From Octopus sinensis (lineage: Eukaryota), in contig NC_043003.1 of NCBI RefSeq assembly GCF_006345805.1, positions 100,254,001 through 100,318,000 on the forward strand: DNA of 64,000 nucleotides, in the 5' to 3' direction. Below the pieces are notes generated by a model, which saw only the letters and a program-made list of their open reading frames with translations, ran no database searches and was not told where the DNA came from. The translations under genes were made by a program, and so were the position numbers. Positions 3,579-60,610 of this stretch are shown here, piece after piece. How positions within the stretch are numbered: the first letter of the stretch is position 1; every line of letters starts with the position of its first letter.

Positions 3579-4357
3579 GGATCTTTTCCTTTTGAACGGC
3601 ACATGTCAACACAATTTCTAGTTAACTAAACACTTTTAAACTTCGTATACTGGTAGAATGTGTTTATAAAACATCATTTTTTCTTGGCTTTATTGAGAAA
3701 ATTCTATAGTTTGTAAGATATTTCGTCTGAAATTTCGAGCATTTCGGCAATTTTAACCAATCGCTGACCTCCATTTGGGGTGAAAACATTCCGTGATGTA
3801 TGAATATGTCCATCGTTTAAGAAACAGATTGGGTTTATTTACATTTGCGAAGAAAAAAAGATACCCTTCCCCCACCCCTAACCCTAAATCTAAAATAGAT
3901 TGAAATGCAATAGATCGATACTAGGGTTATAATTATGGGTGACAATTTCATACAACACCGCTACGGAAAATGGGATTTTTTCCTAGCGGTGTCAAATGAA
4001 AATGTCACCCATAATTATAACCCTAGTATCGATCTATTGCATTTCAATCTATTTTAGATTTAGGGTTAGGGGTGGGGGAAGGGTATCTTTTTTTCTTCGC
4101 AAATGTAAATAAACCCAATCTGTTTCTTAAACGATGGACATATTCATACAGCACGGAATGTTTTCACCCCAAATGGTGGTCAGCGATTGGTTAAAATTGC
4201 CGAAATGCTCGAAATATCTTACAAACTATAGAATTTTCTCAATAAAGCCAAGAAAAAATGATGTTTTATAAACACATTCTACCAGTATACGAAGTTTAAA
4301 TGTGTTTAGTTAATCTAGAAATTGTATTGACATGTGCCGTTCAAAAGGAAAAGATCC
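3579..4357. repeat. Long palindrome: inverted dimer of a MITE-like element, arms ~390 bp
   Basis: ggatcttttccttttgaacggcac... mirrored by ...gtgccgttcaaaaggaaaagatcc, centre ~3973. Same family as the monomer at 6745-7150. Confidence 0.9.
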
Positions 4358-5410: not shown

Positions 5411-5774
5411 ACATCGTAAGGTGTACTAGCCATCTGAATGTGGCTAGCCACTTGGGGTGGGGTGTTACTGATGCTTTTAGCCCCAGGCGATCAACGTCAC
5501 CAGATGGACTTTAGACACAAAATTTCAGTGCCCTTGTGTTATTTGCAAAGGGAGGTCATCCTCCCTCGAAAACTTAAGTGATACATACTATAGTCCGTAT
5601 GTATCACTTAGGTTTTCGAGGGAGGATGACCTCCCTTTGCAAATAACACAAGGGCACTGAAATTTTGTGTCTAAAGTCCATCTGGTGACGTTGATCGCCT
5701 GGGGCTAAAAGCATCAGTAACACCCCACCCCCAGTGGCTAGCCACATTCAGATGGCTAGTACACCTTACGTTGT
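5411..5774. repeat. Near-perfect palindrome, arms ~178 bp, 8-nt loop (5589-5596)
   Basis: acatcgtaaggtgtactagcc...gatacatac / gtatgtatc...ggctagtacaccttacgttgt; only a few mismatches. Confidence 0.95.
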
Positions 5775-6744: not shown

Positions 6745-7150
6745 CCCTTTTCGGTTTGAACGGCAGTTTTTTAAAATAATTTCCACGTAACTAAACACTT
6801 CTAAACTTCGTATACTGGTAGAATGTGTTTATAAAACACCTTTTTCCCTTGGCTTTATTGAGAAAATTCTATAGTTTGTAAGATATTTGTTGTTTTTTCT
6901 TCAATTTCTGCAATTTCAACCAATCAATGACGTCTATTGAGGTGAAAACATTCTGTGCCGTATGAATATGTCCCTCGTTTAAGAAACAGATTGGGTTTAT
7001 TTACATTTCTGAAGAAAAAAGATACTCTTCTCCCCACCCCTAACCCTAAAACAGATTAAAATGCAATAGATCGATACTAGGGTCATAATTATGGGTGACA
7101 ATTTCATATGACACCGCTAGAAAAAACTGCTGTTCAAACCGAAAAGATCC
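6745..7150. mobile_element. MITE-like element with ~25-30-bp TIRs
   Basis: cttttcggtttgaacggcagtttt ... aaaactgctgttcaaaccgaaaag. Body matches the arms of 3579-4357. Confidence 0.75.
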
Positions 7151-9879: not shown

Positions 9880-12720
9880 ATAAAAAATACCTTAATCAAC
9901 AAAGCTGAGGCATCAAACCTACTGAGTCATGAGAAAAAAAGGAAATAAAGAAACAACTCACCACTTGGAACATATTAGTAAAGATTTAAACCTTTTATGC
10001 ACAGCACCAAACTCAATTTTCACAAACAAACTAGACAATGAACAATTCCTAATAAAGAAAACTCACAAGTCCATCTAACAAAAAGGAAAATCAAAAACAT
10101 TTGGAACACAGATCTTAGAAACAGAAAATTCGCATTCTGGAACATGCTTAAAGATTCCAACAAGGTAGAAATTTACAAACGCTGGATGAGTTCAATACCG
10201 AGAGTTCTCCCCAACAAACTGCAAATAAAAATCCCAAATGAACTTGATGAACAGAGAGAAGTGAGAGAAAGATTTGCATTATATCAAATAAAAATAGAAA
10301 GAGAACTTACTTAGATTAAGAGCATCGAACAATGAAGAAAAATACAAAATCATCGACAATGCACAGGGAACTGAATAAACATGCCAAATGGACAACCTCT
10401 TGAAAACATTTCTAAACTTTGGATAGAAACATGTGAAGCTGAAGAAAGAAATTCCCTTCAATGCTGAATTTTTCTTCCAAGGCTATGAATCAAACTTCAA
10501 AAAAACAATTTAATTTGGATGATCCCTTATGAAGACAGTAAAAAATAATCATAAATAATTGAACAGAGAACAAACCACCCTTAATTATGGATACATAAGA
10601 AAACAATGACACAGAACTAACCACTCACCAGGAAAAAAACGGTTTACACACTAGAAATAGGGATCACTCACAACATAAAAATACTAGATCCATGCTTCAA
10701 AGTTCCCAGCCAACCATAAGCCTTGGAAAAACACAAAATAATACTAGAAATAAGATTTTCGGCAAGCCAGAAACTTCAGAAAAAACTGCAGCACAGTTAC
10801 GAATTTTAATTACCAAACAGGAATGAAAAAGACATAAAGCACTGTACCCAATGGCAATCAAAGGACCCTAAGACATGAACACAGACAACAGGTCGATAGA
10901 GCAATATCATCACTCTTTTAACTCAAATTCCAACAGACACATCAACAACCCAAACGTTTTTTATCCCCAGACCAGAGAAACAGGGACACACATTGGCACA
11001 TAACACACAGGAAAAGCCAAAGGTAATTAACCTATTAACTCCTATCAATAACGAAGATCAATATACTCTCAAAGGGGCTAAAATTCACCCCAACTCCACA
11101 AAGACCCAACCAAAATTAAATTAAAAATAGTATAATGGAATTCTGCAGAAAACTAAGACTTACAGAAGCACTAGTTAACTCTAATATCGAAGATGATTCA
11201 CTATTTAAAAACAAAAGCAACCACATTACATACAAAGAAATAAAACACTCGATGAGTTCTGTAACCACGTTGAAAACTTCCCCTACACAAACAAAAAATT
11301 AACTCAAGCTTCAGCACTCCTCAGTGGAAGGAGTTAATTGAATTACAAAATGATGAGGTATTAACTATTCAAGAAGCCAATAAAGGGAGTGCAGTAGTAG
11401 TGATGGATGTGGACTACTACAAAAACCTAGTAGTATTCATACTGAATAATGAAGACTACAATCCCCAAAGAATAATGAAAAGCCTCTCGATATTAGTTCA
11501 ACTACATGGAAAAGGCTTGATGAAAAAAGAAATAAGCTACATAACTAACTTTAAATGTAAACCCAACCTCTTTTATGGCTTACTGAAAATTCATAAAAGC
11601 CATATTATAAATGAAGCAATTAAAAAATCACTGAAGTCATATACATACATGTACCAACACCAGGAGACCTTAAACTAAGGCCCATTATAGCTGGACCATC
11701 CTGTGAAATGCACCGACTGAGTTACTTCATTGACACCCTCTTGAAACCACTTCTAAAATATATTAAGTTACATTAGAGATGATTTGGACATGATAACTTC
11801 CCAGAAAGAGTAAAGGAAAAAACACTGTCTCTTTTGATGTTGTAAACCTGTATATTAATATCTCCCATAATTATGGATTAGAAGCAACTCAATTCAGGCT
11901 GGGAAAATATCCAGAAGAAATACCAGAACATATTAAAATTCATTCTCCAGCAAAATCACTTCATGTTTGACACTACTGTATACCAACAAAAATTTAGAGT
12001 TGTGATGGGAACCAAGGCAGCCCCCGTTCTTTCAAACCTGACAATGGGCTATTTGGAACTAACAGTATATCAGGAGTCACTCAAAAAATTCGGAAATACA
12101 TAAAGGGAAATTGGAAAAGATATTTGGATGACTGTTTCATTCTATGGAATGAGAACATGAAGAATCTTTTGGAATTCAAGACTCCTCAATAGCATAAATA
12201 CAATTCACAATGGAACACAAGAAAAGGAACGCTTTTTCTAGATATACTAACCAAAAAAAGTAAATAGAAACCAACATATTTTACAAAACTATAGACTTGA
12301 AACAATATTTATTATTTAGCTCATGCCACCCGAGACATATTAAAATAAATATCCCATTCAAAGTTGTTGTAATCGAGTTCTCTGGTGTTTTTTTTTTTCC
12401 CAACACTATAGTGCAGATTCTTTTCACTAGATTCATCATCATCATCATCATCATCGTTTAAAACGGACGCTAAACGATGATGATGAATCTAGTGAGAAGA
12501 ATCTGCACTATAGTGTTGGAAAAAAACACCAGAGAACTCGATTACAACAACTTAAAAACATACTTGTCAACAGACACTACCCAACTTCACTTATAGTTGA
12601 TGGGATAAAATGTGCATAAAGAATTAATATACGAACACTAAGAGAGGTCAAACAAAACTACTCACGCACTCTAAAGATATCATTCAACCTGCCAGAAATA
12701 GCTCTGAAATTTTTCCCGTA
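9880..12720 (+). mobile_element. Degenerate Penelope-like element (RT; 3' truncated)
   Basis: Frameshifted RT motifs: ANKGSAVVVMD, FDVVNLY, MGTKAAP, KRYLDDCF (~12118), SCHPRHIKINIPF/NLVRRICTIV. Left boundary uncertain. Confidence 0.85.
12361..12553. repeat. Fold-back palindrome with an RTE/SINE 3' tail at its centre
   Basis: Left arm 12361-12460 is the reverse complement of 12471-12553 (the (ATC)n tract is longer). Loop aaacggacgc. Confidence 0.95.
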
Positions 12721-14610: not shown

Positions 14611-16212
14611 ATGGCAAATAAGCTATGTAAAAGCCATGTTCACAAAGAAACTAAATATAAGAATAAAGATTTATTTTGTGACACCTTGAAAGATTCAAAA
14701 GAGAGACCATACCCATGTGGTATCTGTGGGAAGATGTTCATAAAAAGCAGTCACCTTACTGAACACAAACGTACTCACACTGGAGAGAAACCATACTGCT
14801 GTGACATTTGTGCAAAGACATTTGCAAGAGTTAGTAACTTAATTCAACATAAACTAATTCACACAGGCTCAAAACCTTATCCTTGTGAAATCTGTGGTAA
14901 AAGATTTACTACAAATAATTCATTGAACTCTCATAGACGTATTCACACAGGAGAGAAACCATACCACTGTGATATCTGTGGTAAAACCTTCACATCAAAT
15001 AGTACACTGTATTCTCATAAACGTATTCACACTGGTGAAGAACCATTTCATTGTGATATCTGTGGCAAAACATTCTCTGCAAGTGGAAATTTGACAGCTC
15101 ATAAACGTACTCACACTGGAGAGAGACCATGTTCTTGTGATATTTGTGGCAAAAAATTCACTTGCAATGGTGAACTAGCTCGTCACAAACGAAAACACAC
15201 TGGAGACAAGCCATATCATTGTGATATCTGTAACAAAAGATTCTCTCAGAGTAGTAATTTATACAGTCATGAGAGGATACACACAGGGGACCGGCCATAC
15301 CACTGTGGTATCTGTGGTAAAACATTCTCTGTGAGTGGTAGTTTATCTCGCCATAAACGTATCCACACTGGTGACAGGCCCTACTACTGTGATATCTGTG
15401 GTAAAACATTCACCGCAAGCGGTAGCTTATCTAGTCATAAACGTATTCACACTGGAGAAAAACCATACCATTGTGATGTTTGTGGGGAAACGTTCTCTCG
15501 AAAGAATGCATTAACTTGTCACCAACACCTCCATACAGGTAAGAAACCACATTGCTGTGATATCTGTGGTAAAACATTCTCTCTTACTAATCAGTTAACT
15601 CGTCACAAACAAACCCATGCTGGAAAGGGTGAGCATCACTGTGATATCTGTGGCAAAACGTTTTCAATGAATGCTCATTTATTTCGTCACAGTCGCGTTC
15701 ACACTGGAGAGAAACCATATCACTGTGATATTTGTGGTAAAACATTTGCTCAGAATGGTGAGTTATCCAGCCATATACGTGTACACACAGGAGACAGACC
15801 ATACCACTGCGATATTTGTGGTAAAACATTCTCTAAGAGTGGTAGTTTAATTTGTCACAAACGTATTCATACAGGAGAAAAACCATACCATTGTGATATC
15901 TGCAATAAAGCATTTTCCATAAGTAGTGAACTATCTTGTCATAAACGTATTCACACAGGAGATAGACCATATCATTGTGATGTTTGTGGTAAAACATTCT
16001 CTCAGAGGGGTAATCTGTCTTGTCATAAACGTGTACACACAGGAGATAGACCATACCAATGTAATGTTTGTAGTAAAACATTCTCTCAGAATGTTCACTT
16101 ATCTAGTCATAAATGGAAACACACTCGTGATAGACCATACCATTGTGATATCTGTGGAAAATCATTTTCTCAAAAAGGTAATTTAACTACTCACACACAA
16201 ATGCATACCTGA
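14611..16212 (+). CDS. C2H2 zinc-finger protein, 18 tandem fingers, no recognisable effector domain
   Basis: Uninterrupted ORF of C-x2-C-x12-H-x3-H repeats with TGE/DK/RPY linkers. First ATG at 14611 (track start 14602 is GTG). AATAAA at 16728-16733. Confidence 0.95.
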   Translation: MANKLCKSHVHKETKYKNKDLFCDTLKDSKERPYPCGICGKMFIKSSHLTEHKRTHTGEKPYCCDICAKTFARVSNLIQHKLIHTGSKPYPCEICGKRFTTNNSLNSHRRIHTGEKPYHCDICGKTFTSNSTLYSHKRIHTGEEPFHCDICGKTFSASGNLTAHKRTHTGERPCSCDICGKKFTCNGELARHKRKHTGDKPYHCDICNKRFSQSSNLYSHERIHTGDRPYHCGICGKTFSVSGSLSRHKRIHTGDRPYYCDICGKTFTASGSLSSHKRIHTGEKPYHCDVCGETFSRKNALTCHQHLHTGKKPHCCDICGKTFSLTNQLTRHKQTHAGKGEHHCDICGKTFSMNAHLFRHSRVHTGEKPYHCDICGKTFAQNGELSSHIRVHTGDRPYHCDICGKTFSKSGSLICHKRIHTGEKPYHCDICNKAFSISSELSCHKRIHTGDRPYHCDVCGKTFSQRGNLSCHKRVHTGDRPYQCNVCSKTFSQNVHLSSHKWKHTRDRPYHCDICGKSFSQKGNLTTHTQMHT

Positions 16213-18899: not shown

Positions 18900-19150
18900 T
18901 GAAATTGTAGTCATGGCAGATATTGGTGTCACGCAACTGGCATCCATGCCAGTGACACATAAAAGCACCCATTACTCTCTCAGAATGAATGGCATCCAGC
19001 CATAGAAACTATGTTAAATCAGACTGGACTCTGGTGCAGCCCTGGTTGAACTGTTCAACCCATGCCAACATGAACAATGGATGTTGAATGATGATGATGA
19101 TCATCATCATTTAATGTCCGTTTTCCATGCTGACATGAGTTGGACTGTTT
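18900..19150. mobile_element. RTE-tailed SINE (+) joined tail-to-tail to a short antisense copy
   Basis: ...gttgaatgatgatgatga|tcatcatcatttaatgtccgttttccatgc. Confidence 0.75.
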
Positions 19151-19439
19151 GACCACTGATTTTTGCTTGGGGGCTCTTGCTTTTATAACTATCCAGAAGG
19201 ATAGACATATCGTTGAGAACAATAGAAAATATATTTTATTTATTATTTATGTTTTAGTTTATGTCTATCACTGTTTGAGTTGCATAATAGTGGTTTTAGC
19301 TTTACTTTATATTATATATATATAATATAATATAATATTATATAAATATATATATATAATATAATATTATATATATATATATATATAATGTATGTATGTA
19401 TGTATATATTATTTATTTATTTATTTAATTGAACATGAT

Positions 19440-22261: not shown

Positions 22262-22391
22262 ATGGCTAATCGGACCGTGAAAGATGCTCACTCAGTTAAA
22301 GGAACTAATCCACAGTATTTAGTAGAGAAAATTATACGAACTAGGATTTATGAAAGTCGTTATTGGAAAGAAGAATGTTTTGCATTAACTG
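22262..22391 (+). CDS. PRPF38A: Pre-mRNA-splicing factor 38A, coding exon 1
   Basis: MANRTVKDAHSVKGTNPQYLVEKIIRTRIYESRYWKEECFALT, G|GTAATT donor, phase 1. Confidence 0.97.
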
Positions 22392-24280: not shown

Positions 24281-24499
24281 AAAATCATAAAGCTGGTGTG
24301 GCCACTGCAGTCAGTTAGAGTAAGAAACACCATACCTTAAACCTTCTAAGTAATTAGCTATTGTCATTGAAACTATTGCACAAAATTATATATGTACTAT
24401 AGTTTCAAAAGACAATTATATATATATCATTTAATGTCCGTTTTCCTTGCTGGCATGGGTTGGACAGTTTAATAAGATCTGGCAGGTTGCATAGGAATC

Positions 24500-24912
24500 C
24501 AATATCAGCAAGGATGTTTGATCGAATACTAAGAAATTAGAACTTTTTATAATACAATTGAAGAGTGGAGAAATCGTACATTTTCAGAATTTATCTAAAA
24601 GAATTTCCTGTCAACTTTGAAAAATACACTAAATTATGTGAAGCTTTGTTAGATTTTACGACCAGATTTTCTGACTTCAGAAAGACAGAAATTGAACTAA
24701 AATTGTTGAGTGATCCATTTTCATTTATTTATGTGGAAGTCCCAGCCAAATACCAGTTAGAACTCATTGAGCTTCAAAGTAGAGAATTTTTGAAAACTTA
24801 TAGAAAACATGGCCTTCTTGACTTTTACAAGAAATTGCATTCTTTCAATGAATTTGATCAAATTGCTAATTTAGCTAGAAAACTATTGTGCATGTGGGGT
24901 AGTACATACTGA
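24500..24912 (+). mobile_element. hAT (Charlie/SPIN, GTF2IRD2-like) transposase C-terminal fragment
   Basis: RFSDF...DPF...QLELIELQ...F(Y)KKL...LLCMWGSTY is characteristic of the hAT dimerisation region. Stops at the palindrome. Confidence 0.75.
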
Positions 24913-24915
24913 ACT

Positions 24916-25341
24916 CTAATATATCATTTAAAGGGACTTTGAAATCATCACCATCGGTTAACGTCTGTTTTCCATGCTGGCATGGGTTGGACGGTTTGAC
25001 TGAGGACTGGCAAGCCAGTAGGCTGCACCAGGCTCCAATTTTACCACGATTTCTACAGCTGGATGCCCTTCCTAACACCAACCACTCTGAGAGTGTGGTG
25101 GGTGCTTTTTACATGTCACTGGCACAGAAGCAAGCCAGTGACATGTAAAAAGCACCCACCACACTCTCAGAGTGGTTGGTGTTAGGAAGGGCATCCAGCT
25201 GTAGAAATCGTGGTAAAATTGGAGCCTGGTGCAGCCTACTGGCTTGCCAGTCCTCAGTCAAACCGTCCAACCCATGCCAGCATGGAAAACAGACATTAAC
25301 CGATGGTGATGATTTCAAAGTCCCTTTAAATGATATATTAG
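24916..25341. repeat. Fold-back palindrome of a 5'-truncated RTE-tailed SINE plus ~30 nt of flank; arms 208 bp, 10-nt loop
   Basis: Arms 24916-25123 and 25134-25341 are reverse complements with one mismatch seen (acgtc vs acatt). Confidence 0.97.
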
Positions 25342-25648
25342 GTTTTCGATATTGTTAATACTTTCTTTCTATATACATATGTATTGTAATATGTTTCTTC
25401 CAACCACATGATTTTGTGTTCAGTCCCACCATGTGGTAACTTTAGCAAATATCTTCTATAGCCCCAGACTAACCAAAACCTTGTGAGTGGATTTGTTTAA
25501 TGAAAGCTGAAAGAAGTCCATGTGTGTGTGTGTCTCTCTCTTTGTCTTGACATCAGGTGATTGTTGTAAATGAATGTCATATTCTGCAAAAAAGGAAGGG
25601 CATAGCAAGTGCAAGTATCAAATGTAATCCAAGCAGCTAACAGGAAGG

Positions 25649-27240
25649 AATTCCAACCATGTTTTGTGGTTCGCTACCTCAACTGGATCCAGTGGCTAAA
25701 GACATCATCAGGAGGAACCACGTCCAGTTTCAGCCCCTACTCCTCTACTGTTTTCCACGTGATGGGCCCCTTACTTTTGGAGGTGTCGTCAGCTCTGGTG
25801 TTGAGTGCGTTTCTTCTTTCTCCTTTTTCCTTCTGTTCTTTGGTTTCTTTGATGCAGCGTCAACGAATGTCAGCAGGTGACTGATCATCCTCCCAAATTT
25901 CCCTTTAAATACTTACCGGTAGCAGCCAATACCAGCTAACTGTCACTGACACTGTCTAAACTTCAACTGACTAATGGAGGGGAAGGGTGCGTGTTCCATA
26001 GGGTTAAGTCCAGTCTTTTTGTTGTTTTTATGAGTGGAAATATTAACAGTCTTTCCAAATCCGTAGCCAGTTCTCAGTATCCCTTCCATCTTCTGTCTGT
26101 CTTGTATATTTTATTTGAAGGCCTGGCTTTATATCCTTTTCCCTCCTTCTAGAAGTATATTTTTCTGTGCTTTTCCACTTTTGGGTATTTTCCCCTATTA
26201 TATCCCTCAATCTTCTCCTTGAGTACTGTTCTTATGTCACCGAGAACTTGATTGTGATGCCATGTATATCTGTCTAGTGCTAGCCTGCAATTTGACAAAA
26301 CATCTCTCACCGTCGCTTTCTCTCTGCATCTACATTCATCAGTTGTTTGTATGTTCCAGCGGACTAAATTCGCCAGTGAAGGTAAAACATCGAAGGTAGA
26401 CTTGATCAGGAAGGATGTTCTTGCTTGTTCCCAAGCCCAAAGTTCCTTCCTTGAGATTCTGCAACTGACCACATATTCCTCCCATCTTGGGCACTGTCCC
26501 TGTTAACTACATTGCACCAAATGTACATTTCTCCTCCTTTCTCACTTTATACACCACTGCCTCTTTCATTTCTTTTACACTGCTCATGCAAAATGGCTTG
26601 AAATTATGCAACCCTAGACCGGCTCTTGCTTCTTGCTTCGCTCCGACTATATCTGCATGCCTTAGTTTTCCGATTGCCCTGTTTACTGCCTCTTCCGCCT
26701 TCCATTTCCTCCCTGTTCGTACCTTTGGAGGGTTTTCCCAGATGCTCTGATCTTTAGAATACCTTTGCATCATTACTGTCCTTGCCTTTCCTACCTTATA
26801 TTCTTCAGCGATTGATGTTATCGGTAGTTGCACCACGGGTTTTCCATATAGTGCAGTTGTAGTCAGTGGTTTCGGCAGACCAAGCCATTTTCTGATAAAC
26901 ACACTGCATCTTTGTTCCATCCTTTCTACTCTACTCGAGGCTACTTTGTACATTTGCAATGGCCACATTATCCTTGGATACAGTCCAAATTGCAGTATCC
27001 AACATTTGAATTTCCCCACTAATGTTGTTCTGTCAACTGCCTTTAGTCCTTGTTCCACTAAATCGTGTGTTTCTTTGCTTTGCTTCTTGTCATTTAGTAA
27101 ATCTCTGTACTATCTACTGAGACTCTTTACTGGTTGTTCTTTCACTGTTAGTATGTCTTCACTTCCTATCATGATTTCACTTCTTTTTGGATTCCTTTCA
27201 CAAAAGCCACACTTTGAGATTTTTTGGTTTTGAATTTCAT
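25649..27240 (-). mobile_element. HERO/NeSL-like RLE non-LTR retrotransposon, 5' truncated
   Basis: WILQFGLYPRIMWPL..KWLGLP (RT thumb), zf-RVT region, CCHC knuckle CRC...VLSNC, start of the RLE domain (deleted), then a 3' UTR shared with 42107-42460. Confidence 0.85.
25697..25750 (-). ncRNA. Candidate non-circularly permuted hammerhead ribozyme (copy 1)
   Basis: CAG-UA-GAGGAG UAGGGGCU-GAAA-CUG GACGUGG UUCCUC-CUGAUGA-UGUCUUUA. Core strands intact and three stems can form; pair 10.1/11.1 is U-U. Confidence 0.6.
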
Positions 27241-29843: not shown

Positions 29844-30003
29844 CAGAACTGATGGTTGACAAAGCAATGGAACTGAAGTATATTGGTGGAGTTTTTGGTG
29901 GAAACATTAAGCCAACACCGTTTTTATGTTTAGTATTGAAAATGTTACAGATTCAACCTGAGAAAGATATTGTTGTTGAATTCATCAGAAATGAAGATTT
30001 CAA
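29844..30003 (+). CDS. PRPF38A: PRPF38A coding exon 2
   Basis: (A)ELMVDKAMELKYIGGVFGGNIKPTPFLCLVLKMLQIQPEKDIVVEFIRNEDF(K); ttgCAG acceptor, GTAAGT donor; phases match exons 1 and 3. Confidence 0.97.
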
Positions 30004-32314: not shown

Positions 32315-34301
32315 CTAGCTTAAGGTGACCAGCTCTACGCACGGGTAAGAGTGTGGTTGTTACTTTCTGTTGCTTCCTTTCAGCATGTAAAAAGCACCAT
32401 CCGAACGTGGCCGATTGCAGCGCCACCTTGACTGGCTTCTGTGCCGGGGGCATGTAAAAAGCACCAACCGATCGTAGCCGCTGCCAGCCCCCCTGGCACC
32501 TGTGCTGGTGGCACGAAAAAAGCACCCACTACACTCACAGAGTGGTTGGCGTTAGGAAGGGCATCCACCTGTAGAAACACTGCCGGATCAGACTGGAGCC
32601 TGGTGCAGCCTCCTGGCTTCCCAGACCCCGGTCAAACTGTCCAACCCGTGTTAGCACGGAAAACGGACGTTAAACGATGATGATGATTCTCCCTCTTTGT
32701 TTCTCTCTCCTTTCTCTCTCACTTTCTCACTCTCTTACTTTTCTTTTCTCTCGGACTCTCCCTCGCTTTCTCTTACTCTCTATCTTTATCTATCTCTCTC
32801 CCATTTATAAACAACAAAAGATCTTGAGTAAGTTGAGAAATAAAATATTTTGAAAGATCAATCATAAATATCAGGCAGTGACAACGGAAAGGTCTGCTTC
32901 AAGGCAGACAGCAAAACACTAACATTTAAAAGGGACAGACGAACTTGCGAGCTGAATAAAAATAATAAAATATTGGAAACCAAAGTTTGAAGGGATAGAA
33001 TCTGAGGATAGTAGAGTCACCCTGGCTGGCATTTCTTAACGACGGACAGCAACGTATTGACAGTTTAACGGCTGGCGTAAAATTTTGAACTTGATGTAAA
33101 AGAAAATTCCTAAACACCAAGTTTTGAAGTGATTGTTTCTTACGACAGTAGACTCACGATGGCAAGCATTCAAAACTTCTTCGTCATGGACGGCAACACA
33201 TTGGCGGTTAAAAGGCTGGCGCAAATTTTTTAGCTTGATGTAACAGAGAATTCCTAAACACCCACTCCTTTAAATTTTAATCCCCTTCCAGTCCCATTTA
33301 GACCCCTTTTCACATTTTGGTTAATATAACCCGATTTCATTCGGGTCTACTGGGGCCAAATTTTACAAGATGAGGAATTTTGTCCAGCACTTTTAACATA
33401 GGTGTGCATATTTTCAGCTCAACCGACCACATAATGCACACATTATATATATATGTATGTATATATATGTGTGTGTGTGTGTGTGCGCACGCATTATATA
33501 TACAAATGTATACAATTTATATATATATGTATAAATTAAATTAGAGATAAAACCACTAATAGGCAAATCAAACAGTGAAAAACATAAACCAAAACAAAAA
33601 TTAAAATATAATATACAAAATATATAAAATATAAAATTGAAAAATTTAAATTATTTATATTTAAAATTAAAATTATTAATTTATATTTATAATTTTAAAA
33701 AAAATATATATAACTATCGAACAGTATTAAAAAGTTTAATATGCATAAATACAGATATATACACTTTGTATATATACATTATATATACATATTTATATAT
33801 AGAACACACACACATATATAAATTAACCCAATAAATATCTGATTCATAAATTTGTTCTCATGATTGTGTGGTGGTGGTGGTGCTGGTGGCGATGATAATT
33901 CCCTCTATGAATGCAGCGCTGTCGAAGGCGGGGAGGGGGGAGATATAGAACGCCGTGACACGACGTTATAAAGAGAAAGTGAAGGTAAGAGAGTTAGACG
34001 CCATGAAACGACGTTATATATAGAAAGTGATGGGAAGGGAAGAAAGAGAGTGAGTGACGGAGGAAGACAGATGCATAAAAATATGAGAGTAGACTTGTCA
34101 AAGTGCGCTTTTGGCCCTAGCAACGACACCTTTTAAGATGGGGATTTCTAACCTAGCCCACTAACATCCTCACCTCATTTTACATGTCCCTGTAAAATTT
34201 TGGAGTCAATCCGACGGGATCTAGTGGCCTTTAACCCGTTCTCAATGCCAAAACCAGACAAACAAACAAACTTTTCGCATTTCAGATTTATAATATAGAG
34301 A
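32315..34301 (-). mobile_element. Non-autonomous Helitron
   Basis: Minus strand begins A|TCTCTATATTATAAATC (34301) and ends with a GC-rich subterminal segment plus CTAG|T (32318-32315): canonical TC...CTAG termini in an AT target. Confidence 0.7.
32380..32690 (+). mobile_element. RTE-tailed SINE nested in the Helitron
   Basis: Internal ~65-bp repeats (aaaagcacc...) and 3' tail aaaacggacgttaaacgatgatgatga. Confidence 0.85.
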
Positions 34302-35603: not shown

Positions 35604-35779
35604 AAAGATATACATATCGTAACTAATAATTATCAAGAAATTATATATAGATTAATGTGTTAACAACAATAATAATCACAATAATAATAATAATAATCAA
35701 ACTTAATACAATTCAAAAGTTAAATAATATTGTTAAATAAAAAAAGTTACTTAGCTTGTTGATGAAAATAATATAATAT

Positions 35780-36111
35780 AAAATTATTTACATCAAAAAC
35801 GTGCTTTTTTCTATGAAAATCCTTATTTTTTTACGATTTTTTCACTGCTGTGTTGCCACTTTTCGGTGTATTTCAACCAGAAAAATGTTCACTTGAAGAG
35901 AATAACAAGCTACATAATGCAAAATTTTTACGACCCGCTGGAATTGGAATTTTTGAAAAGTAAAAATTTTGCATTATGTAACTTGTTATTCTCTTCAAGT
36001 GAAAATTTTTCTGGTTGAAATACACCGAAAAGTGGCGACACAGCAGTGAAAAAATCGTAAAAAAATAGGTATTTTCATAGAAAAAAGCACGTTTTTGATG
36101 TAAATAATTTT
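35780..36111. repeat. Fold-back palindrome, arms ~152 bp, 28-nt loop
   Basis: aaaattatttacatcaaaaacgtgc...aaaatttttac / gtaaaaatttt...gcacgtttttgatgtaaataatttt; about 5 mismatches. Confidence 0.93.
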
Positions 36112-36284
36112 TGGTGTTAACATGGTCCGATTTGAATTTTATCTTCTACGGAAGGAAAAGCAACCCTTCTATCATACTCTCAATTTTGGTCAACTTGCGC
36201 CGCAGGGTCTCGGAGGAGATAGTGTTAGTTGAAGGTTACCAAACCTGGTGCACACAGACAACTTCAGCTTTATATAGAGAGAGA
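35932..36284 (-). mobile_element. Helitron 5' fragment
   Basis: A|TCTCTCTCTATATAAAGCTGAAGTTGTCTGTGTG start at 36284, similar in style to the 34301 and 43852 ends. Confidence 0.55.
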
Positions 36285-37281: not shown

Positions 37282-37467
37282 TATATTTATTTATTTATTT
37301 CTGTAAGAGTTACAGGTTGGGAAGCCAACCAACTAAGGGATAGTACCTATCCAATATAGTGCTGGTAGTGTGCCCAATTATTAATACCCAAGTGCTAGTT
37401 ATTGCGTGACAATTTCGCAATCGAGTGTCATTTATGAGCAGGGGTAAAAAGTGGTTTACCCTTAATT

Positions 37468-37707
37468 TATATGGCAAAAAGAAAATGGAGAGGATGCAAA
37501 AATAACATACATCAGCTGATAGACATTCTGCTATGTCTATTTATTCCAAAACAAAAGGGAGTATTATAAGAATACATACACATGCAATGACTGTGTGCTG
37601 CACAGATCTTTTACTCCTTTATGTATTGGAATAAATAGACATAGTAGAATGTCTACTGGCTGATGTATGTCATTTTTGTATATCCTCCATTTTCTTTTTG
37701 CCATATA
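37468..37707. repeat. Older, diverged palindrome, arms ~95 bp, ~48-nt spacer
   Basis: tatatggcaaaaagaaaatggag...gggagta / tactccttt...ctccattttctttttgccatata. Confidence 0.85.
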
Positions 37708-39629
37708 TATATATAGCAAGACATCTGTGCTGTACCATACTTTAGCTTTTCAACACCTGACATAAAGCCACTACCCTCTCAAATCTATCTCCCTTTTTAG
37801 TTGCAGGAGCTTTTTCCTTTTCTGTTTTTTCCCCGTTTTCTGTTTTGCAAGTTACTTGGCAACCACACTAATATCAATGGTACGAAAAAAAAGCACCCAG
37901 CACACATTGTATTCTGGTTAGCATTTGGAAGGGTGTTCAGCCACAGAAATTATGTCAGAGCTGACACTGGAACTTGGCACAGCCCTCCAGCTTGGCAGAT
38001 GATGTTGTTGATGATATTACATCCCTTGTTAAACTTAGAGGAAATGTTTTTCTACACTTGGATACCTTCACTACAACTACTATTATTACTGCCACCACCA
38101 CTGAATTATAAATTCAGATAAAAATTTTCTTACATAAAGAATATAGGTTAACAGTGTCATTGTATAATACCCATAGAGTATATTTGGGAATTTTTATTGC
38201 ATAAAAACAATCTTATCCAGTATGCCAAGTACATGTATATACTGTGTAAAATAGAGGTTTATGAGTCCAATGTCACCTCAAGTGTATGTATGTATATATG
38301 TGTGTGTGTGTGTACATACACACATGGAACCTGGTAATAACCAGATTAAGGTATTATTTAAAAACCAGAGAACATATATTTCAAAACTTAGACACATAAT
38401 AACCCAAGTTATGCAGGCTGGCTGTGATAGGTGCAGACATCGTTGTATGGTTAAGAAGTCCACTTTGCAACCACATGCTTTCAAGTTCAGTTTCATGTAC
38501 TGCACCTTGGACATTTGTCTTCTGTTTCAGTCTTGGCTTTCTGAGTGAATTTGGTCAGTGGAAACTGTAGGAAGCCAAAAGTTGACAATGACATCAACAT
38601 TTCTGCTTTCATCAGACTGCTTTACTTGAGTACTTTTTTGGTTTTATATATTCTTATTTAGTAAGTTGGATCTTTTTGTGGGTGGGGGTAGCCATGTGAA
38701 AGATAATTAAGTGTGGTGTATGTAGACAGGGGAAGTAGTTGTGTAGGAAGTGGGTGTAGCAGAAGGTGTGAGTTGATAGAAAGTTATGATGAGAAGACTT
38801 ATTTCAATTTGATGTAGGAATTTTGTTATTGTTGAGGGTTTTGGCTGTCACTGCCAACTTTTTCCTTGTAAAAGTTTATATGTACTCTACTAAGGGTATT
38901 GAATAATCCTTCAGTTTGTTGTTTTTATATATAACTTGACATAGAAGCAAACATTTAATTCTGTGTGAACATGTGTATATGCTTCCTTGAAAATTGAGAG
39001 CTCGTGGATTTACTTGAATGAAACTGAACGATGTTTATATTTCTTGTTGACATTATAACTAGTTGCTTTTTGCTTTTAAAGATTTATGAAATAAAAATAA
39101 ATCTCATACTTGAAATCCAAGTAAAGAGTTTGACAGGAAGATTATCTGGCTGTAAAATCCTGGCTCAAGTACACCCCTCATCCAGTCTTGGCTTGCATGC
39201 AAAATTGGTGTCAAGTAAATGGAGGCTTGAACCAAGAGATCATTGTTCCAGCTTGTTCATTTCAAGGCTATTTTACCATTTATTCAGTTAGGGACAAAAG
39301 GCCATTAAACATGCTCAAAAATTTCCATAGGCCATCACCAAACATCACCATCATCGTTTAACGTGATCTGAAATCATTGGAAGATTAAATAACACAGTTC
39401 AACTAGGAACTGAGTCCACACCATTGGCATTTATCTTGCCACCATAACTATGCTATAGTGCTAATATTCTAGAGTAATTCAATATGACACTCTGTTGCTT
39501 CTATCATTAATGTTTCTTTAGTAAAATATGAAACTTTGATGATTCCTCTCAGTTCCAAGCATTTATAGAGAAAGAAGAGTACAGTTGATTGTATGATAAA
39601 TTCTATAAGGATTTAGTACCACCAAACTG

Positions 39630-40155: not shown

Positions 40156-40277
40156 ATATGTGCGTGCCCTAGGAGCAATGTATATGAGACTTGTTGGAAC
40201 ATCTTTAGACTGCTTCAAATATCTGGAGCCTTTGTATAACGATTACAGGAAGTTGAGGAGACAAAATAAATCTGGAG
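40156..40277 (+). CDS. PRPF38A: PRPF38A coding exon 3
   Basis: YVRALGAMYMRLVGTSLDCFKYLEPLYNDYRKLRRQNKSG; tttAG / GTAAGA; phases match. Confidence 0.97.
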
Positions 40278-50083: not shown

Positions 50084-50169
50084 AATTTGAAATTGTGCAC
50101 ATGGATGAATTCATAGATGAACTTTTGAGAGAAGAGAGAATTTATGACATTATTTTGCCCCGCATTCAG
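50084..50169 (+). CDS. PRPF38A: PRPF38A coding exon 4
   Basis: (E)FEIVHMDEFIDELLREERIYDIILPRIQ; ttattAG / GTAATC. Confidence 0.97.
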
Positions 50170-50173
50170 GTAA

Positions 50174-50330
50174 TCATCATCAGCATCATTTAATTACCAT
50201 TTTCCATGCTGGTATGGGTTGGAGAGTTTGACAGGAGCCAGCAAGTCTGAAGACATCATGCTCCAGCTAGATACCCTTACATATGCCAATGCCAACCATT
50301 TTACTGCATCTACTGAGTACTTTTTTGTAG
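50174..50330 (-). mobile_element. Degenerate RTE-tailed SINE 3' part abutting the exon 4 donor
   Basis: atcatcatcagcatcatttaattaccattttccatgctggtatgggttgg is the antisense family tail. Confidence 0.65.
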
Positions 50331-56960: not shown

Positions 56961-57744
56961 CAAGCATTGTCATTCATTTCCAATAGTCCACCCACACTTA
57001 ACACGAAAAATTTCTCACACACTCTACCACAGTAAACCAACTTACATCTCTTCTCTTCCTCACATTTCCACTTCATTCCCCAATCCTGTCCTCTTGGCCC
57101 TGTGCCACTGTGTCATTGCTCTCTGCTAGTTCTGACTTGTGTGTTTTACCTATGCTCCTCTCATTGTATCATTGCGTATGCCTGGCACTTTGCCACCATC
57201 TCTATCCTGCCGTTTCTCTCTCTCTCTCTCTCTCCTGCACTTCCCTCAGGTTGGGTAACCATGTATTTCCTTTGCGGTAGCACACCTGTTTCTGTCTTCA
57301 TTCCTGATCTCTTTCTCCCTAGCTGGGTAACCTTGTACATCTTCTACAGCAAGACACCTGTTTCTGTCTCTCTGCCTCACTATAACCTTTCAACATCTGA
57401 TACAAGATCACCTTCTCCAATGCCCCCTCTCCTCTCAAAAGAGTTTCTATTTTTTTCTTGCAAGTACTTGGTGACCCTGTCAGTGCAGGTGCTACTTAAA
57501 AGCATCCAGTCCACATTGTAAAGTGGTTCGTGTTCAGAAGAGCATCCAGCTGTAAAAACTTTGCCTAAACTGACCTCTCCTGTGCTTGTGCCATGTGAAA
57601 AGCACTCAGTCCACTCTGCTGAGTGATTGGTGTTAGGAAGGGTATCCAGCTGTAAAAATCCTGTGAAAACAGTTACAGAAGTCTGGTATTTTTATTCACA
57701 AAGAAGAATTTCCCTAACTTAATTTTTTGATTTTAAGACTATTC

Positions 57745-60610
57745 ATCATCGTTTAACGTCCGCTTTCCATGCTAGCATGGGTTGGACAGTTCAACTGGGG
57801 TCTGGGAAGCCAGAAGGCTGCGCCAGGCCCAGTCTGATCTGGCAGTGTTTCTACAGCTGGATGCCCTTCCTAACGCCAACCACTCCATTTGTGTAGTGGG
57901 TGCTTTTTACGTGCCACCTGCACAGGTGCCAGACAAGGCTGGCAAACGGCCACAATCGGATGGTGCATTTTACGTGCCACCGGCACGGAGGCCAGTCGGG
58001 GCAGCACTGGCAACGGCCACATTCGGATGGTTCTCTTACGTGCCATCGGCACTGGTATCACTGCTACAATTTCCATTGATGTTGATCGATTTCGATTTTG
58101 ATTTTCACTTGTCTCAACAGGTCTACACAAGTAGGGTTTGTGTCATAAGAAGGAAAGGTATGCATAATTGGACTGGCTACGTCACAGGTAGAGGCCACGG
58201 GTTATGGTCTCACTTGTCCTGCCGGGTCTTCCCACGCACAGCATACTTCCAAGGTTTCGGTCTCTGGTCATTTCCTCGGTGAGACCTAATGTTCGAAGGT
58301 CGTGCTTCACCACCTCGTCCCAGGTTTTCCTGGGTCTACCTCTTCCACAGGTTCCCTCAACCGCTAGGGTGTGGCACTTTTTCACACAACTATCCTCATC
58401 CATTCTCGCTACATGACCATACCAGCGCAAACGTCTCTCTTGCACACCACAACTGATGCTTCTTAGGTCCAACTTTTCTCTCAGGGTACTTACACTCTGT
58501 CGAGTATGAACACTGACATTACACATCCATCGGAGCATACTGGCTTCATTTCTTGCGAGCTTACGCATGTCTTCAGCAGTCACGGCCCAAGTTTCACTGC
58601 CATGTAGCATGGCTGTTCATACACATGTGTCATACAGTCTGCCTTTTATTCTGAGCGAGAGGCCTTTTGTCACCAGCAGAGGTAATAGCTCTCTGAACTT
58701 TGCCCAGGCTATTCTAACTCTAGCAGTTACACTTTCAGCACACCCGCCCCCGCTACTGGCTTGGTCACCTAGGTAACGGAAACTATCAACTATTTCTAGT
58801 TTTTCTCCCTGGAATGTAGCAGAAGTTGGTCTCTGAGCATTTTCAGTGTTTATTGCTCCTGAGCAACTGCCACATACAAAAACTATCTTCCTAGTTAACC
58901 TTCCTTTGATATTGCTGCACCTCTTATGTGTCCATAGTTTACACTTGGTGCATCTTATAGAGTTTCTACCTACGCCTTTTCTACAGATCGAGCAGGGCCA
59001 TCTACCTGAAGGTGTTTGTGATTTCTCTGCCTTCCTACATATTAGGACTTTGGTTTTAGCTAGGTTGATTTTAAGGCCCTTCGATTCTAATCCTTGTCTC
59101 CACACTTGAAACTTTGCCTCTAGTTCTGATAGTGACTCAGCAATTAGAGCAAGGTCATCAGCATATAGGAGCTCCCAGGGGCATCCTGTCTTGAATTCCT
59201 CCGTTATCGCCTTAGAGAAGCTCCTAGAGGCAACCCGTTATTCCTCTGTTATTGCCTGGAGGACTATGATGAATAAAAGGGGACTGAGGGCTGAACCTTG
59301 GTGGACGCCTACTTCTACCAGGAATTCTTCACTATACTCATTGCCAATCCTAACCTTACTAACAGCCTCTCTGTAAAGGGGCTGTACAGCCCTTATTAAC
59401 CATTCGTCAATCTCCAGTTTCTGCATCGCCCACCAGATAAGGGATCAGGGGACCCTGTCAAAGGCTTTCTCCAAGTTCACAAAAGCTAAGTATAGGGGTT
59501 TATCTTTAGCTAGGTATTTCTCCTGCAGCTGTCTCACCAGAAATATGGCATCGTAGGTGCTTTTCCCTGGCATGAAACCAAACTGCATCTCATCCAAGCT
59601 GACTCTCTCCCTAATAAGTTGGGCTATGATCCTCTCCGTAACCTTCATTACCTGATCCAAAAGCTTGATACCTCTGTAATTATTTGTATCTAATGCGTCA
59701 CCTTTACCTTTGTAACAGTTGACTATGGTGCTGCTACACCAGTCATTGGATATGACTCCTTCGTATATCACCTGGTTAACTATACGGGTGACTAGGCTAT
59801 AGCCGACACTACCAGATATTTTAAGCATCTCTGCAGTAATTCCTGATGGGCCTGGGGCTTTCCCTGTCTTCATGCTTCTAATTGCTTTAACTACTAAGGA
59901 ACCGTCAACTCGGATAGCTGGTCCCTCTGTTGGGTCGACATTAGGCAGACTCTCTTTATCCCATTCATTTTCTTTATTTAGCAGCCTCTCATAATGGTGT
60001 CTCCATACCTCTCTCTTTGCATCCTCATTCAGCGCAAGTGAGCCATCATCCATGCGAATACATTTCTCTCCTACCACATCACGATTCTCTCTCACACACT
60101 GTCTTGCAACAATACCTCAAGTCTTTGGTCCTCACGGCGCAGAACATTGGCAAATTTTTTCTTATCTGCTTCCCCTCTGGCTAAATAAACCTGTCTCCTA
60201 GCTTCTCTTTTGGCAGTCTAATACAACTCCCTGCTACCACCATTTTCCCAGTCCTTCCAAGCCTGTCTCTTTTCTCTAATAGCCCTGTCTACAACATTGT
60301 TCCACCACCACGTTATTTTGGGTCGAGAGGCGACTTTGCACCAGCCACAGATCTGGTCAATGGCTCTCAGCAGGTTGTCCCTTAGAGACCTCCAGTTGTC
60401 TTCTACCCCATGTGAAGCTATATCCCCTTCTACTTCGTCAAAGGCTTCAAGTAATATGTCCCTAAGTCTCTGTCCATTCGCAGGATCTTTAAGCTTCCAG
60501 ATCCTTCTTCTCCACGTTGGTCGTCTTCTGGTCATTCTCTTAGTCCTGATCCTAAAGTCATTAACTACCAGTCTATGTTGTGAGGTAAATTCTTCGCCTG
60601 GGAAGGTTAA
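57745..60610 (-). mobile_element. 5'-truncated RTE LINE with SINE-like 3' tail
   Basis: ORF fragments 60218-60625, 59445-60095, 58617-59105 and 58182-58610 (LHGSETW, LRWYGHV, GRPRKTW); tail at 57745. Confidence 0.92.

What the first reader, a model, noticed from the sequence alone, without database searches (positions are those of the whole stretch)
24916..25341. Snap-back retro-insertion: SINE plus target flank duplicated as a near-perfect 426-bp hairpin
Seen: left arm = ~30 nt of non-SINE flank + (ATC)n tail + antisense SINE. The loop (acagaagcaa) continues the antisense SINE. The right arm mirrors everything including the flank. The antisense SINE here naturally contains ACTGGC...GCCAGT, a 6-bp inverted microhomology at the turn (compare cttctgtgcc in the 32430 copy). 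Inference: first-strand cDNA primed from the flank folded back, copied itself and ran ~30 nt into the target DNA before joining. This differs from ordinary TSD formation and from twin priming. Alternative: polymerase-theta-type templated fold-back repair. It sits in PRPF38A intron 1, forming a 208-bp dsRNA.
Basis: partly seen in the sequence, partly recalled or inferred. Interest (0 to 1): 0.8.

Follow-up and report, generated by a model that had tools for sequence, protein, structure and literature searches.

The report
Fold-back SINE insertion in octopus intron
A 426-base near-perfect hairpin in intron 1 of the octopus PRPF38A gene is a truncated SINE plus 28 bases of its flank copied back on itself, most likely a retrotransposition by-product already known from laboratory systems but here fixed in a wild genome, with a second, older example 12 kb away.

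Summary
Arms 24916-25123 and 25134-25341 (208 nt) differ at one CpG site, and the spacer is 10 nt. Each arm holds 28 nt that no other copy has, an imperfect (ATC)n tail and a 5'-truncated antisense retroposon. The spacer continues the left-arm element, and the turn sits on the element's own CTGGC/GCCAG inverted repeat. The window is Octopus sinensis (GCA_006345805.1), PRPF38A intron 1.

New finding: a second palindrome of the same build lies at 12361-12553. It has about 70 nt of flank, the tail and only about 17 nt of the same element, a 10-nt loop continuous with one arm, and slightly diverged arms. Two tail-outward palindromes centred on a family that covers about 2-3% of the window favour a link to integration (first-strand cDNA snap-back) over a random later fold-back. 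A later fold-back is not excluded, because I could obtain no empty site, orthologue or reads.

Unexplained: homology to a hAT-like element stops at 24911, 4-5 nt outside the palindrome, and the "flank" carries a SINE-3'-end-like motif.

cDNA snap-back junctions are already described for R2 and L1 in cultured cells. This is therefore a natural member of a known kind, of moderate interest.

The parts
24514..24911 (+). Context: fragment of a FAM200/GTF2IRD2-like (hAT/Buster-type) ORF, ending ...LLCMWGSTY. Homology to paralogous copies stops at 24910-24911.
   Evidence: Protein hits to Octopus bimaculoides at 78-79% identity. Intact homologues continue ...GSTY(C/S)CEQFFSS.... DNA homology to L001-L005 ends at 24910-24911.
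24912..24915 (.). Four bases (AACT) between the end of hAT homology and the outer edge of the palindrome.
24916..24943 (+). Left-arm 'flank', 28 nt beyond the element's tail, mirrored at 25314-25341. It contains ATATATCATTTAA, which equals the 3' end and tail of the fragment at 24422-24434.
   Evidence: Not present after the tail of any other copy. No homology to the hAT continuation (p>0.1).
24944..24955 (-). Tail of the retroposon, read on the + strand as ATCATCACCATC (imperfect (GAT)n).
24956..25123 (-). Antisense body of the retroposon, left arm. It is 5'-truncated by at least 125 nt relative to the copies at 32383-32688 and 57743-58043.
25124..25133 (-). Spacer/loop ACAGAAGCAA. It continues the antisense element of the left arm (antisense of GCTTCTGT plus a 4-nt AAGC repeat).
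25134..25139 (.). GCCAGT: last bases of the continuous antisense element and first bases of the fold-back copy. It pairs with ACTGGC at 25118-25123 (6-bp microhomology at the turn).
25134..25341 (+). Right arm: self-templated reverse-complement copy of 24916-25123. It comprises sense element 25134-25301, tail 25302-25313 and flank copy 25314-25341. The single difference is at 25295 (CpG to CpA).
25342..25346 (+). Second junction: the right arm is joined to GTTTT..., with no evident microhomology, no direct repeat of the left flank (no TSD) and no hAT homology.
12361..12553 (.). Second palindrome of the same architecture. The arms are 12361-12460 and 12471-12553, with a 10-nt loop at 12461-12470 (AAACGGACGC). 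Each arm holds about 70 nt of non-element flank, the tail ((ATC)7 on the left, (GAT)3 on the right) and the element's last bases. Loop plus right arm read as the continuous sense 3' end AAAACGGACGCTAAACGATGATGATG.
   Evidence: The flank parts differ by one substitution and a T12/A7 run.
22262..22391 (+). PRPF38A exon 1 (context).
   Evidence: annotated PRP38 gene start in L006
29844..30003 (+). PRPF38A exon 2 (context).

Best explanation
This is a real inverted duplication made while a (GAT)n-tailed, non-autonomous retroposon (SINE) was being integrated by target-primed reverse transcription.

Shown by the sequence:
- The + strand runs without a break through left flank, tail complement, antisense element and loop to GCCAGT at 25139.
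- From there on it is the exact reverse complement of itself back to 24916.
- It is then joined to unrelated DNA at 25342.

Inferred:
- The + strand of the left flank primed first-strand cDNA.
- Just after the enzyme had copied the element's own CUGGC...GCCAG inverted repeat, the cDNA 3' end left the RNA. It paired with ACTGGC 10 nt upstream and primed DNA-templated synthesis along the cDNA, through the tail and 28 nt further.
- Those 28 nt were single-stranded primer-strand DNA (exposed by a staggered second cut or by resection), or were reached by strand displacement, or were themselves cDNA from an abortive first initiation.
- The new 3' end was then joined to the other side of the break without a TSD.

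The palindrome at 12361-12553 is the same accident on the opposite strand, after only about 17 nt of cDNA. One consequence is that PRPF38A pre-mRNA carries a 208-bp perfect hairpin in intron 1.
For: (1) The anatomy fits point by point. The tail is at the outer end of each arm and the element is 5'-truncated exactly at the turn. The loop is continuous with one arm only, and in the polarity expected for a cDNA 3' end. The turn comes immediately after the element's natural inverted repeat.

(2) A second palindrome has the same build, the same element, tail outward, and a 10-nt loop continuous with one arm. The family covers only about 2-3% of the window, and the other large palindromes look like MITEs. 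Two element-centred, tail-outward cases among a handful of palindromes are expected by chance at roughly the 10^-3 level (my estimate).

(3) In the second case only about 17 nt of element lie at the centre. That is a very small target for a random later fold-back but an ordinary abortive cDNA.

(4) The arms of the second case have diverged (1 substitution, homopolymer and tail-length differences). The one mismatch in the first case is a CpG transition. Both are as expected of real, ageing genomic DNA.

(5) cDNA snap-back, copying the cDNA and less often nearby target DNA, is a documented 5'-junction class for R2 (PMC11371274). Small-hairpin-primed inverted duplications are documented at L1 insertion sites.

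(6) There is no TSD, no TIR-type family and no other copy of the 28-nt flank in 136 kb examined.
Against: - Nothing dates the fold-back relative to the insertion. The element copy differs from the window consensus by about 10%, including three decayed CpGs and a mutated tail shared by both arms, while the arms differ by only 0.5%. Taken at face value this says the duplication is much younger than the insertion. The argument is weak, because several of these differences are shared with other copies (subfamily variants) and only about 10 copies were available.
- The end of hAT homology 4-5 nt outside the palindrome is not explained by the simple version of the model.
- The copy extends 28 nt and about 70 nt into the flank, longer than usual TSDs, so resection or strand displacement must be assumed.
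- The only assembly obtained is the one the window comes from (L006 is 100% identical), so there is no independent confirmation.
Confidence: 0.55

Rival explanations
1. Post-insertional DNA-level fold-back. An ordinary, older antisense copy of the element sat here. Later a break or stalled fork left a + strand 3' end at the element's short inverted repeat. The end snapped back on the 6-bp microhomology and a DNA polymerase (polymerase-theta-type end joining, or a replicative template switch) copied 202 nt. The end was then joined downstream, deleting the element's 5' part and some flank.
For: - It gives exactly the same sequence.
- The arm boundary ignores the element's boundary (it runs 28 nt past the tail), which is natural if the element played no role.
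- Both arms share decayed CpGs, a mutated tail and a 4-nt deletion relative to the window consensus, while the arms differ by 0.5%, as if an old copy were duplicated recently.
- A long perfect palindrome is expected to be short-lived, so it should be young (established knowledge).
Against: - Two palindromes in 64 kb are centred on the same sparse family, both with the tail outward, one with only about 17 nt of element at the centre.
- Templated snap-back inserts of the polymerase-theta type are usually tens of bases, not 208 (own knowledge).
- A break would have to fall exactly at the end of the inverted repeat, or a flap would have to be trimmed.
- There is no microhomology at the second junction.
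- The age argument is undermined by subfamily variation.
Confidence: 0.3
2. Sequencing or assembly artefact: a fold-back chimera in long-read data that survived into the consensus of GCA_006345805.1.
For: The arms are nearly identical. The only copy of the locus I could obtain is the same assembly.
Against: - The palindrome is internal, with unique and different sequence on both sides. Missed-adapter or fold-back reads are palindromic over the whole read (own knowledge).
- The 10-nt centre is element sequence, not adapter-like.
- The arms differ by a CpG transition.
- The sister structure at 12361-12553 has diverged arms, and MITE-type palindromes with TSDs assemble normally nearby.
Confidence: 0.07
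3. The whole stretch 24912-25341 is new DNA inserted into the hAT-like element with loss of its downstream part. The 28-32 nt next to the tail are not old target. They are cDNA of an abortive first initiation on another element RNA, or of a read-through 3' extension, and the fold-back copy simply ran to the start of the cDNA. This is a variant of the best explanation with a different priming site.
For: - hAT homology ends at 24910-24911 in five paralogues, 4-5 nt from the palindrome edge.
- The 28 nt contain ATATATCATTTAA, an element 3' end plus an AT tail as at 24422-24434.
- Very short cDNAs do occur (about 17 nt in the second example).
- No strand displacement is needed.
Against: - The right flank is not the hAT continuation, so a target deletion of at least 200 bp must be added.
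- 12 nt (AGGGACTTTGAA) remain unassigned.
- The roughly 70-nt flank of the second example has no such explanation.
- The coincidence could be chance, about 5% by my rough estimate.
Confidence: 0.08

Closest known systems
cDNA 'snap-back' 5' junctions of R2 target-primed reverse transcription (PRINT experiments; PMC11371274)
   Same: [quoted passage not shown] This gives antisense element sequence joined to the target.
   Different: Those are somatic events seen in sequencing reads from cultured human cells, with an R2 protein at rDNA. Here the structures are germline-fixed, involve a cephalopod (GAT)n-tailed SINE at non-rDNA sites, and the self-copy runs the full length of the cDNA and on into the flank.
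Inverted duplications and inversions at L1 insertion sites by self-annealing of ORF2p-generated break ends (bioRxiv 10.1101/2024.12.14.628481)
   Same: A small hairpin with 2-bp microhomology primes synthesis, giving an inverted duplication next to a TPRT insertion, followed by end joining.
   Different: The reported inverted duplications are of genomic DNA on the reciprocal end. Here the duplicated unit is the primary RT end itself (cDNA plus primer-side flank). Those cases come from cancer genomes and cell clones.
Twin priming (L1 5' inversion; Ostertag and Kazazian 2001, own knowledge)
   Same: An inverted element segment is produced at integration.
   Different: Twin priming joins two different parts of the element, with an internal deletion or small duplication and normal TSDs. 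It does not duplicate the same segment, the tail or the flank. This was tested here and not met.
Polymerase-theta snap-back templated insertions and replicative template-switch mutations (own knowledge)
   Same: A 3' end folds back on microhomology and copies its own strand, producing an inverted repeat at a repair junction.
   Different: These are usually tens of bases and have no relation to retroelement tails. Here the copy is 208 nt, and two cases share the tail-outward geometry.
Hairpin-primed second-strand synthesis in classical cDNA cloning (own knowledge)
   Same: The first-strand cDNA 3' end loops back and primes its own copying.
   Different: That is an in-vitro reaction whose loop is cut by S1 nuclease. 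Here the loop and both arms are retained in the chromosome.

Membership tests
TPRT cDNA snap-back (hairpin-primed) insertion | The retroelement 3' end with its tail abuts the flank that served as primer. | tested here: met
   The tail complement at 24944-25955 region (24944-24955) follows the flank directly. The element's 3' end was defined from five other copies.
TPRT cDNA snap-back (hairpin-primed) insertion | The 5'-truncated element is followed at once by its own reverse complement, and the loop is continuous with the strand that has cDNA polarity. | tested here: met
   left arm, loop and GCCAGT form a continuous antisense element. The same holds, mirrored, at 12361-12553.
TPRT cDNA snap-back (hairpin-primed) insertion | The fold-back formed in the same event as the insertion (an empty site lacks both; there is no intermediate plain insertion). 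| not testable with these tools
   No orthologous or allelic locus was obtainable. The age comparison of arms against the family was inconclusive.
TPRT cDNA snap-back (hairpin-primed) insertion | Recurrence with a tail-outward bias among element-centred palindromes. | tested here: inconclusive
   Two of two cases in this window are tail-outward. A sample of 64 kb is too small, and no further O. sinensis sequence was available.
Twin-priming inversion | The inverted and direct segments are different parts of the element, and TSDs flank the whole. | tested here: not met
   The arms are the same segment at 207 of 208 positions and include the tail and flank. There is no TSD.
Foldback/MITE DNA transposon | Terminal inverted repeats, a target-site duplication, and other copies of the family. 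| tested here: not met
   There is no TSD at 24915/25342. The arms are a retroposon plus unique flank, and the flank has no other copy in the window or in L001-L005. By contrast, 3583-4353 has an 8-bp TSD, CATTCGTT.
Polymerase-theta-type or replicative templated fold-back | Microhomology at both junctions and a short templated tract. | tested here: inconclusive
   The first junction has 6 bp of microhomology. The second junction has none evident, though the pre-event sequence is unknown. The tract is 208 nt.
Library or assembly fold-back artefact | Absent from independent reads; arms identical; adapter or nothing at the centre. | not testable with these tools
   Only the same assembly was retrieved. 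Indirect evidence is against it: a CpG mismatch between the arms, an element-derived loop, and the diverged sister structure.
   The (GAT)n tail and many 5'-truncated copies are met. The element is at least 300 nt, with about 60-nt tandem units at its 5' end. No tRNA-like head was found. The partner LINE was not looked for.

The most novel reading that the evidence does not exclude
Snap-back during SINE/LINE integration is a frequent, lineage-typical outcome in Octopus. Two cases in 64 kb would scale to tens of thousands genome-wide. It would continually seed long, perfect hairpins inside introns of expressed genes, and so supply dsRNA substrates for the unusually active cephalopod ADAR editing and small-RNA systems.
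Probability: 0.15. Interest if true: 0.75.

Novelty: new member of a known kind. Interest (0 to 1): 0.5.

Why it matters
How the first cDNA strand of a non-LTR retroelement acquires its second strand and its 5' junction is still unsettled. Snap-back products have so far been seen mainly in reads from engineered R2 or L1 systems and in tumours. Fixed, natural examples that keep the whole intermediate (primer flank, tail, cDNA, loop, self-copy, second junction) are a fossil record of that step. They show how far self-copying can run, how little microhomology is needed (6 bp in one case, about 1 bp in the other) and how the end is resolved (no TSD). If they are common in octopus genomes, they would also be a steady source of long intronic dsRNA in a lineage known for heavy A-to-I editing. 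For PRPF38A itself nothing suggests a function. The hairpin is most likely a neutral, probably unstable, passenger.

Tried and rejected
**Orthologous or independent locus**
- A PRPF38A protein search returned nothing closer than 86% identity.
- Exact look-ups of four window ORFs found nothing.
- The zinc-finger ORF look-up returned only the window's own assembly.
- A homology search with that zinc-finger ORF was swamped by vertebrate ZNFs and wasted.
- A cluster look-up failed.
- The full PRPF38A protein could not be rebuilt, because its last ~97 codons lie beyond the window.
- Two metagenome scans for junction strings were empty.

**Rebuilding the empty site from paralogous hAT-like copies (L001-L005)**
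- This showed only that hAT homology stops at 24911.
- Neither the 28-nt flank nor the right flank continues the element.

**Dating the insertion against the duplication**
- I compared divergence from the family consensus. The result was inconclusive, because the few copies in the window fall into subfamilies that share several of the 'private' changes.
- The element is absent from 72 kb of O. bimaculoides and other cephalopod loci.

**Readings rejected**
- MITE or foldback transposon: no TSD and no family.
- Twin priming: the same segment is duplicated and the flank is included.
- Two independent insertions head to head, or dual priming from both break ends: neither can mirror the flank.
- Right arm as the original copy: the loop is in the wrong orientation for it.

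**Search for TSDs of other copies, to define the target motif**
- None was recognisable.

Full report
**What is there**

Arms 24916-25123 and 25134-25341 are reverse complements over 208 nt, with a 10-nt spacer ACAGAAGCAA. A base-by-base mirror check finds one mismatch, 24962 C against position 25295, and an abrupt loss of symmetry outside both arms. The mismatch lies at a CpG that the element family's consensus also has. The left arm keeps GACGTT and the right arm reads GACATT. As RNA the region folds into one uninterrupted stem at -429 kcal/mol, z = -48 against shuffles.

**Where it is**

An exact look-up of the zinc-finger ORF at 14611-16212 returned Octopus sinensis assembly GCA_006345805.1, chromosome CM016865.1. 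The returned locus is 100% identical to window 4611-26212. It therefore identifies the source but is not independent evidence.

PRPF38A exons lie on the + strand at 22262-22391, 29844-30003, 40156-40277, 50084-50169 and from 56457 and about 62671 onward.

**What the arms are made of**

The window holds five longer copies and several 3' fragments of one short retroposon. In the sense orientation it ends ...GGAAAACGGACGTTAAACGATGATGATGATT.
- Longer copies start at least 125 nt further 5', with two or three tandem units of about 60 nt. Each unit contains CTGGC-N6-GC(C/T/A)GG.
- Literature context: in the sister species O. vulgaris, SINEs make up 11.6% of the genome. A SINE/LINE burst is dated to about 18 My, after the split from O. 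bimaculoides (PMC13282606). This fits the element's absence from 72 kb of O. bimaculoides and other cephalopod loci.

In the palindrome the left arm reads as follows:
- 24916-24943: 28 nt found after no other copy's tail.
- 24944-24955: ATCATCACCATC, the tail complement with one substitution.
- 24956-25123: antisense element.

The spacer's first 8 nt, ACAGAAGC, are the antisense of GCTTCTGT in the unit at 32432-32447, followed by a 4-nt AAGC repeat. The next six bases, GCCAGT, are both the natural continuation of the element and the complement of ACTGGC at 25118-25123. Read the other way, the spacer does not fit the element. So the + strand is continuous from left flank to 25139, and from there it copies itself backwards. 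The right arm is the copy.

**A second case**

Scanning the window for inverted repeats with short spacers turned up 12361-12460 / 12471-12553 with a 10-nt loop, AAACGGACGC.
- Its arms are about 70 nt of non-element sequence, then the tail ((ATC)7 on the left, (GAT)3 on the right), then the last bases of the same element.
- Loop plus right arm read AAAACGGACGCTAAACGATGATGATG, the element's sense 3' end with one change.
- The left arm matches the element only through GTTTAA.

This is the mirror image of the finding. The continuous strand is the - strand, about 17 nt of element were made before the turn, the microhomology is about 1 nt, and the self-copy again runs through the tail and into the flank. 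The flank parts differ by one substitution and a T12/A7 run, so this one is older.

The other large palindromes look different.
- 3583-4353 has an 8-bp TSD, CATTCGTT, and a single-arm relative at 6747-7125.
- 37465-37710 is flanked by TA.
- 5411-5774 and 35776-36113 have no tails and are unclassified.

**Mechanism**

The structure requires a 3' end at 25139 on the + strand that folded back and was extended on its own strand for 202 nt, then joined to 25342. Three features point to first-strand cDNA.
- The tails are outward in both cases.
- The element is truncated exactly at the turn in both.
- Both cases involve one family that occupies only about 2-3% of the window. Among the few palindromes present, I estimate the chance expectation for two element-centred, tail-outward cases at about 10^-3.

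In the main case the turn comes immediately after the enzyme would have finished copying the element's inverted repeat. That is the moment at which the nascent strand first becomes self-complementary.

Such snap-back 5' junctions are an explicit category in R2-mediated insertions in human cells. [quoted passage not shown] Small-hairpin-primed inverted duplications also accompany L1 insertions in clones and tumours (bioRxiv 10.1101/2024.12.14.628481). Copying of the flank can be explained in two ways. The primer strand may have been left single-stranded by a staggered second cut or by resection. Alternatively, the polymerase may have displaced the opposite strand. No TSD is expected, and none is seen.

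**What does not fit, or cannot be settled**

1. *Timing.* A later fold-back at a break or stalled fork inside a resident copy gives the same sequence.
   - The copy differs from the window consensus by about 10%. This includes three decayed CpGs, a 4-nt deletion and a mutated tail, all shared by both arms, whereas the arms differ by 0.5%.
   - That pattern would favour the later event. However, several of these differences recur in other copies (GCCAGC, ACAGAC, AAATC.TG), so they are at least partly subfamily markers. About ten copies are too few to decide.
2. *The hAT boundary.* The ORF at 24565-24912 is the C-terminal part of a FAM200/GTF2IRD2-like hAT protein.
   - DNA homology to five paralogous copies ends at 24910-24911, 4-5 nt outside the palindrome.
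   - Neither the 28 nt nor the right flank continues the element.
   - The 28 nt also contain ATATATCATTTAA, identical to the 3' end and AT tail of the fragment at 24422-24434.
   - One reading is that priming occurred at about 24911, the 28-32 nt are cDNA from an abortive first initiation, the self-copy ran to the start of the cDNA, and the rest of the hAT element was lost. The other reading is coincidence (about 5% by my rough estimate). I could not discriminate between them.
3. *Independent data.* All attempts to obtain an orthologue, an allele or reads failed.

An artefact is unlikely, for four reasons. The palindrome is internal and flanked by different unique sequence on each side. The loop is element sequence. 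The arms differ by a CpG transition. The sister structure has diverged arms. Still, an artefact is not excluded.

**Verdict**

- Snap-back of first-strand cDNA during integration is the best explanation: about 0.55, or about 0.63 including the variant with a different priming site.
- A post-insertional DNA fold-back is the main rival, at about 0.3.
- An artefact is at about 0.07.

The kind of event is already known from experimental R2 and L1 systems. What is new is a pair of natural, germline-fixed, complete examples in a cephalopod, and the hint that they may be common there. Interest is moderate.

Noticed in passing
window 12361-12553: A second palindrome with the same architecture as the finding: about 70 nt of flank, the (ATC)n/(GAT)n tail and the last bases of the same retroposon, with a 10-nt loop continuous with the right arm. 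The arms are slightly diverged.
   Followed up: yes
window 3583-4353: A roughly 770-bp palindromic element (arms about 385 nt, about 94-95% identical, 6-nt spacer) flanked by an 8-bp direct repeat, CATTCGTT. This looks like a hAT-type foldback MITE. A single-arm relative lies at 6747-7125 (86%).
   Followed up: partly
window 5411-5774 and 35776-36113: Two more near-perfect palindromes: 178-nt arms at 98% with an 8-nt spacer, and 152-nt arms at 97% with a 28-nt spacer. They have no retroelement tail, no obvious TSD and no other copy in the sequence examined. Their nature is unknown.
   Followed up: partly
window 37465-37710: An inverted-repeat element with termini TGGCAAAAAG.../...CTTTTTGCCA, flanked by TA-rich sequence. 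It looks like a Tc1/mariner-type MITE.
   Followed up: no
window 19043-19155: Two copies of the same retroposon joined tail to tail (...GATGATGATGAT|CATCATCATTTAATG...), 77% complementary. This looks like an insertion into the tail of an older copy in the opposite orientation.
   Followed up: no
window 24421-24911: The 400-bp hAT-like ORF fragment (24514-24911) is bounded on both sides by antisense 3' ends of the same retroposon with AT-rich tails (24421-24475, and the motif inside 24916-24943). Both of its truncation points may stem from retroposon insertions accompanied by deletion.
   Followed up: partly
window 50164-50232: An antisense 3' fragment of the retroposon starts within the first bases of PRPF38A intron 4. 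The 5' splice site reads CAG|GTAATCATCATCAGCATCATTTAATTACC, so the element's tail supplies positions +4 onward of the intron.
   Followed up: no
window 14611-16212: An intact single-exon ORF of 533 aa with about 17 C2H2 zinc fingers lies 6 kb upstream of PRPF38A. It is annotated as a gene in the O. sinensis assembly and belongs to the expanded octopus ZNF family.
   Followed up: partly
(protein database): No cephalopod PRPF38A appeared among the best 120 hits (the best was 86%, Mytilus), although the O. sinensis gene is on record as a 337-aa product. The octopus proteins may be ranked lower as partial models, or may be missing from the word index.
   Followed up: no
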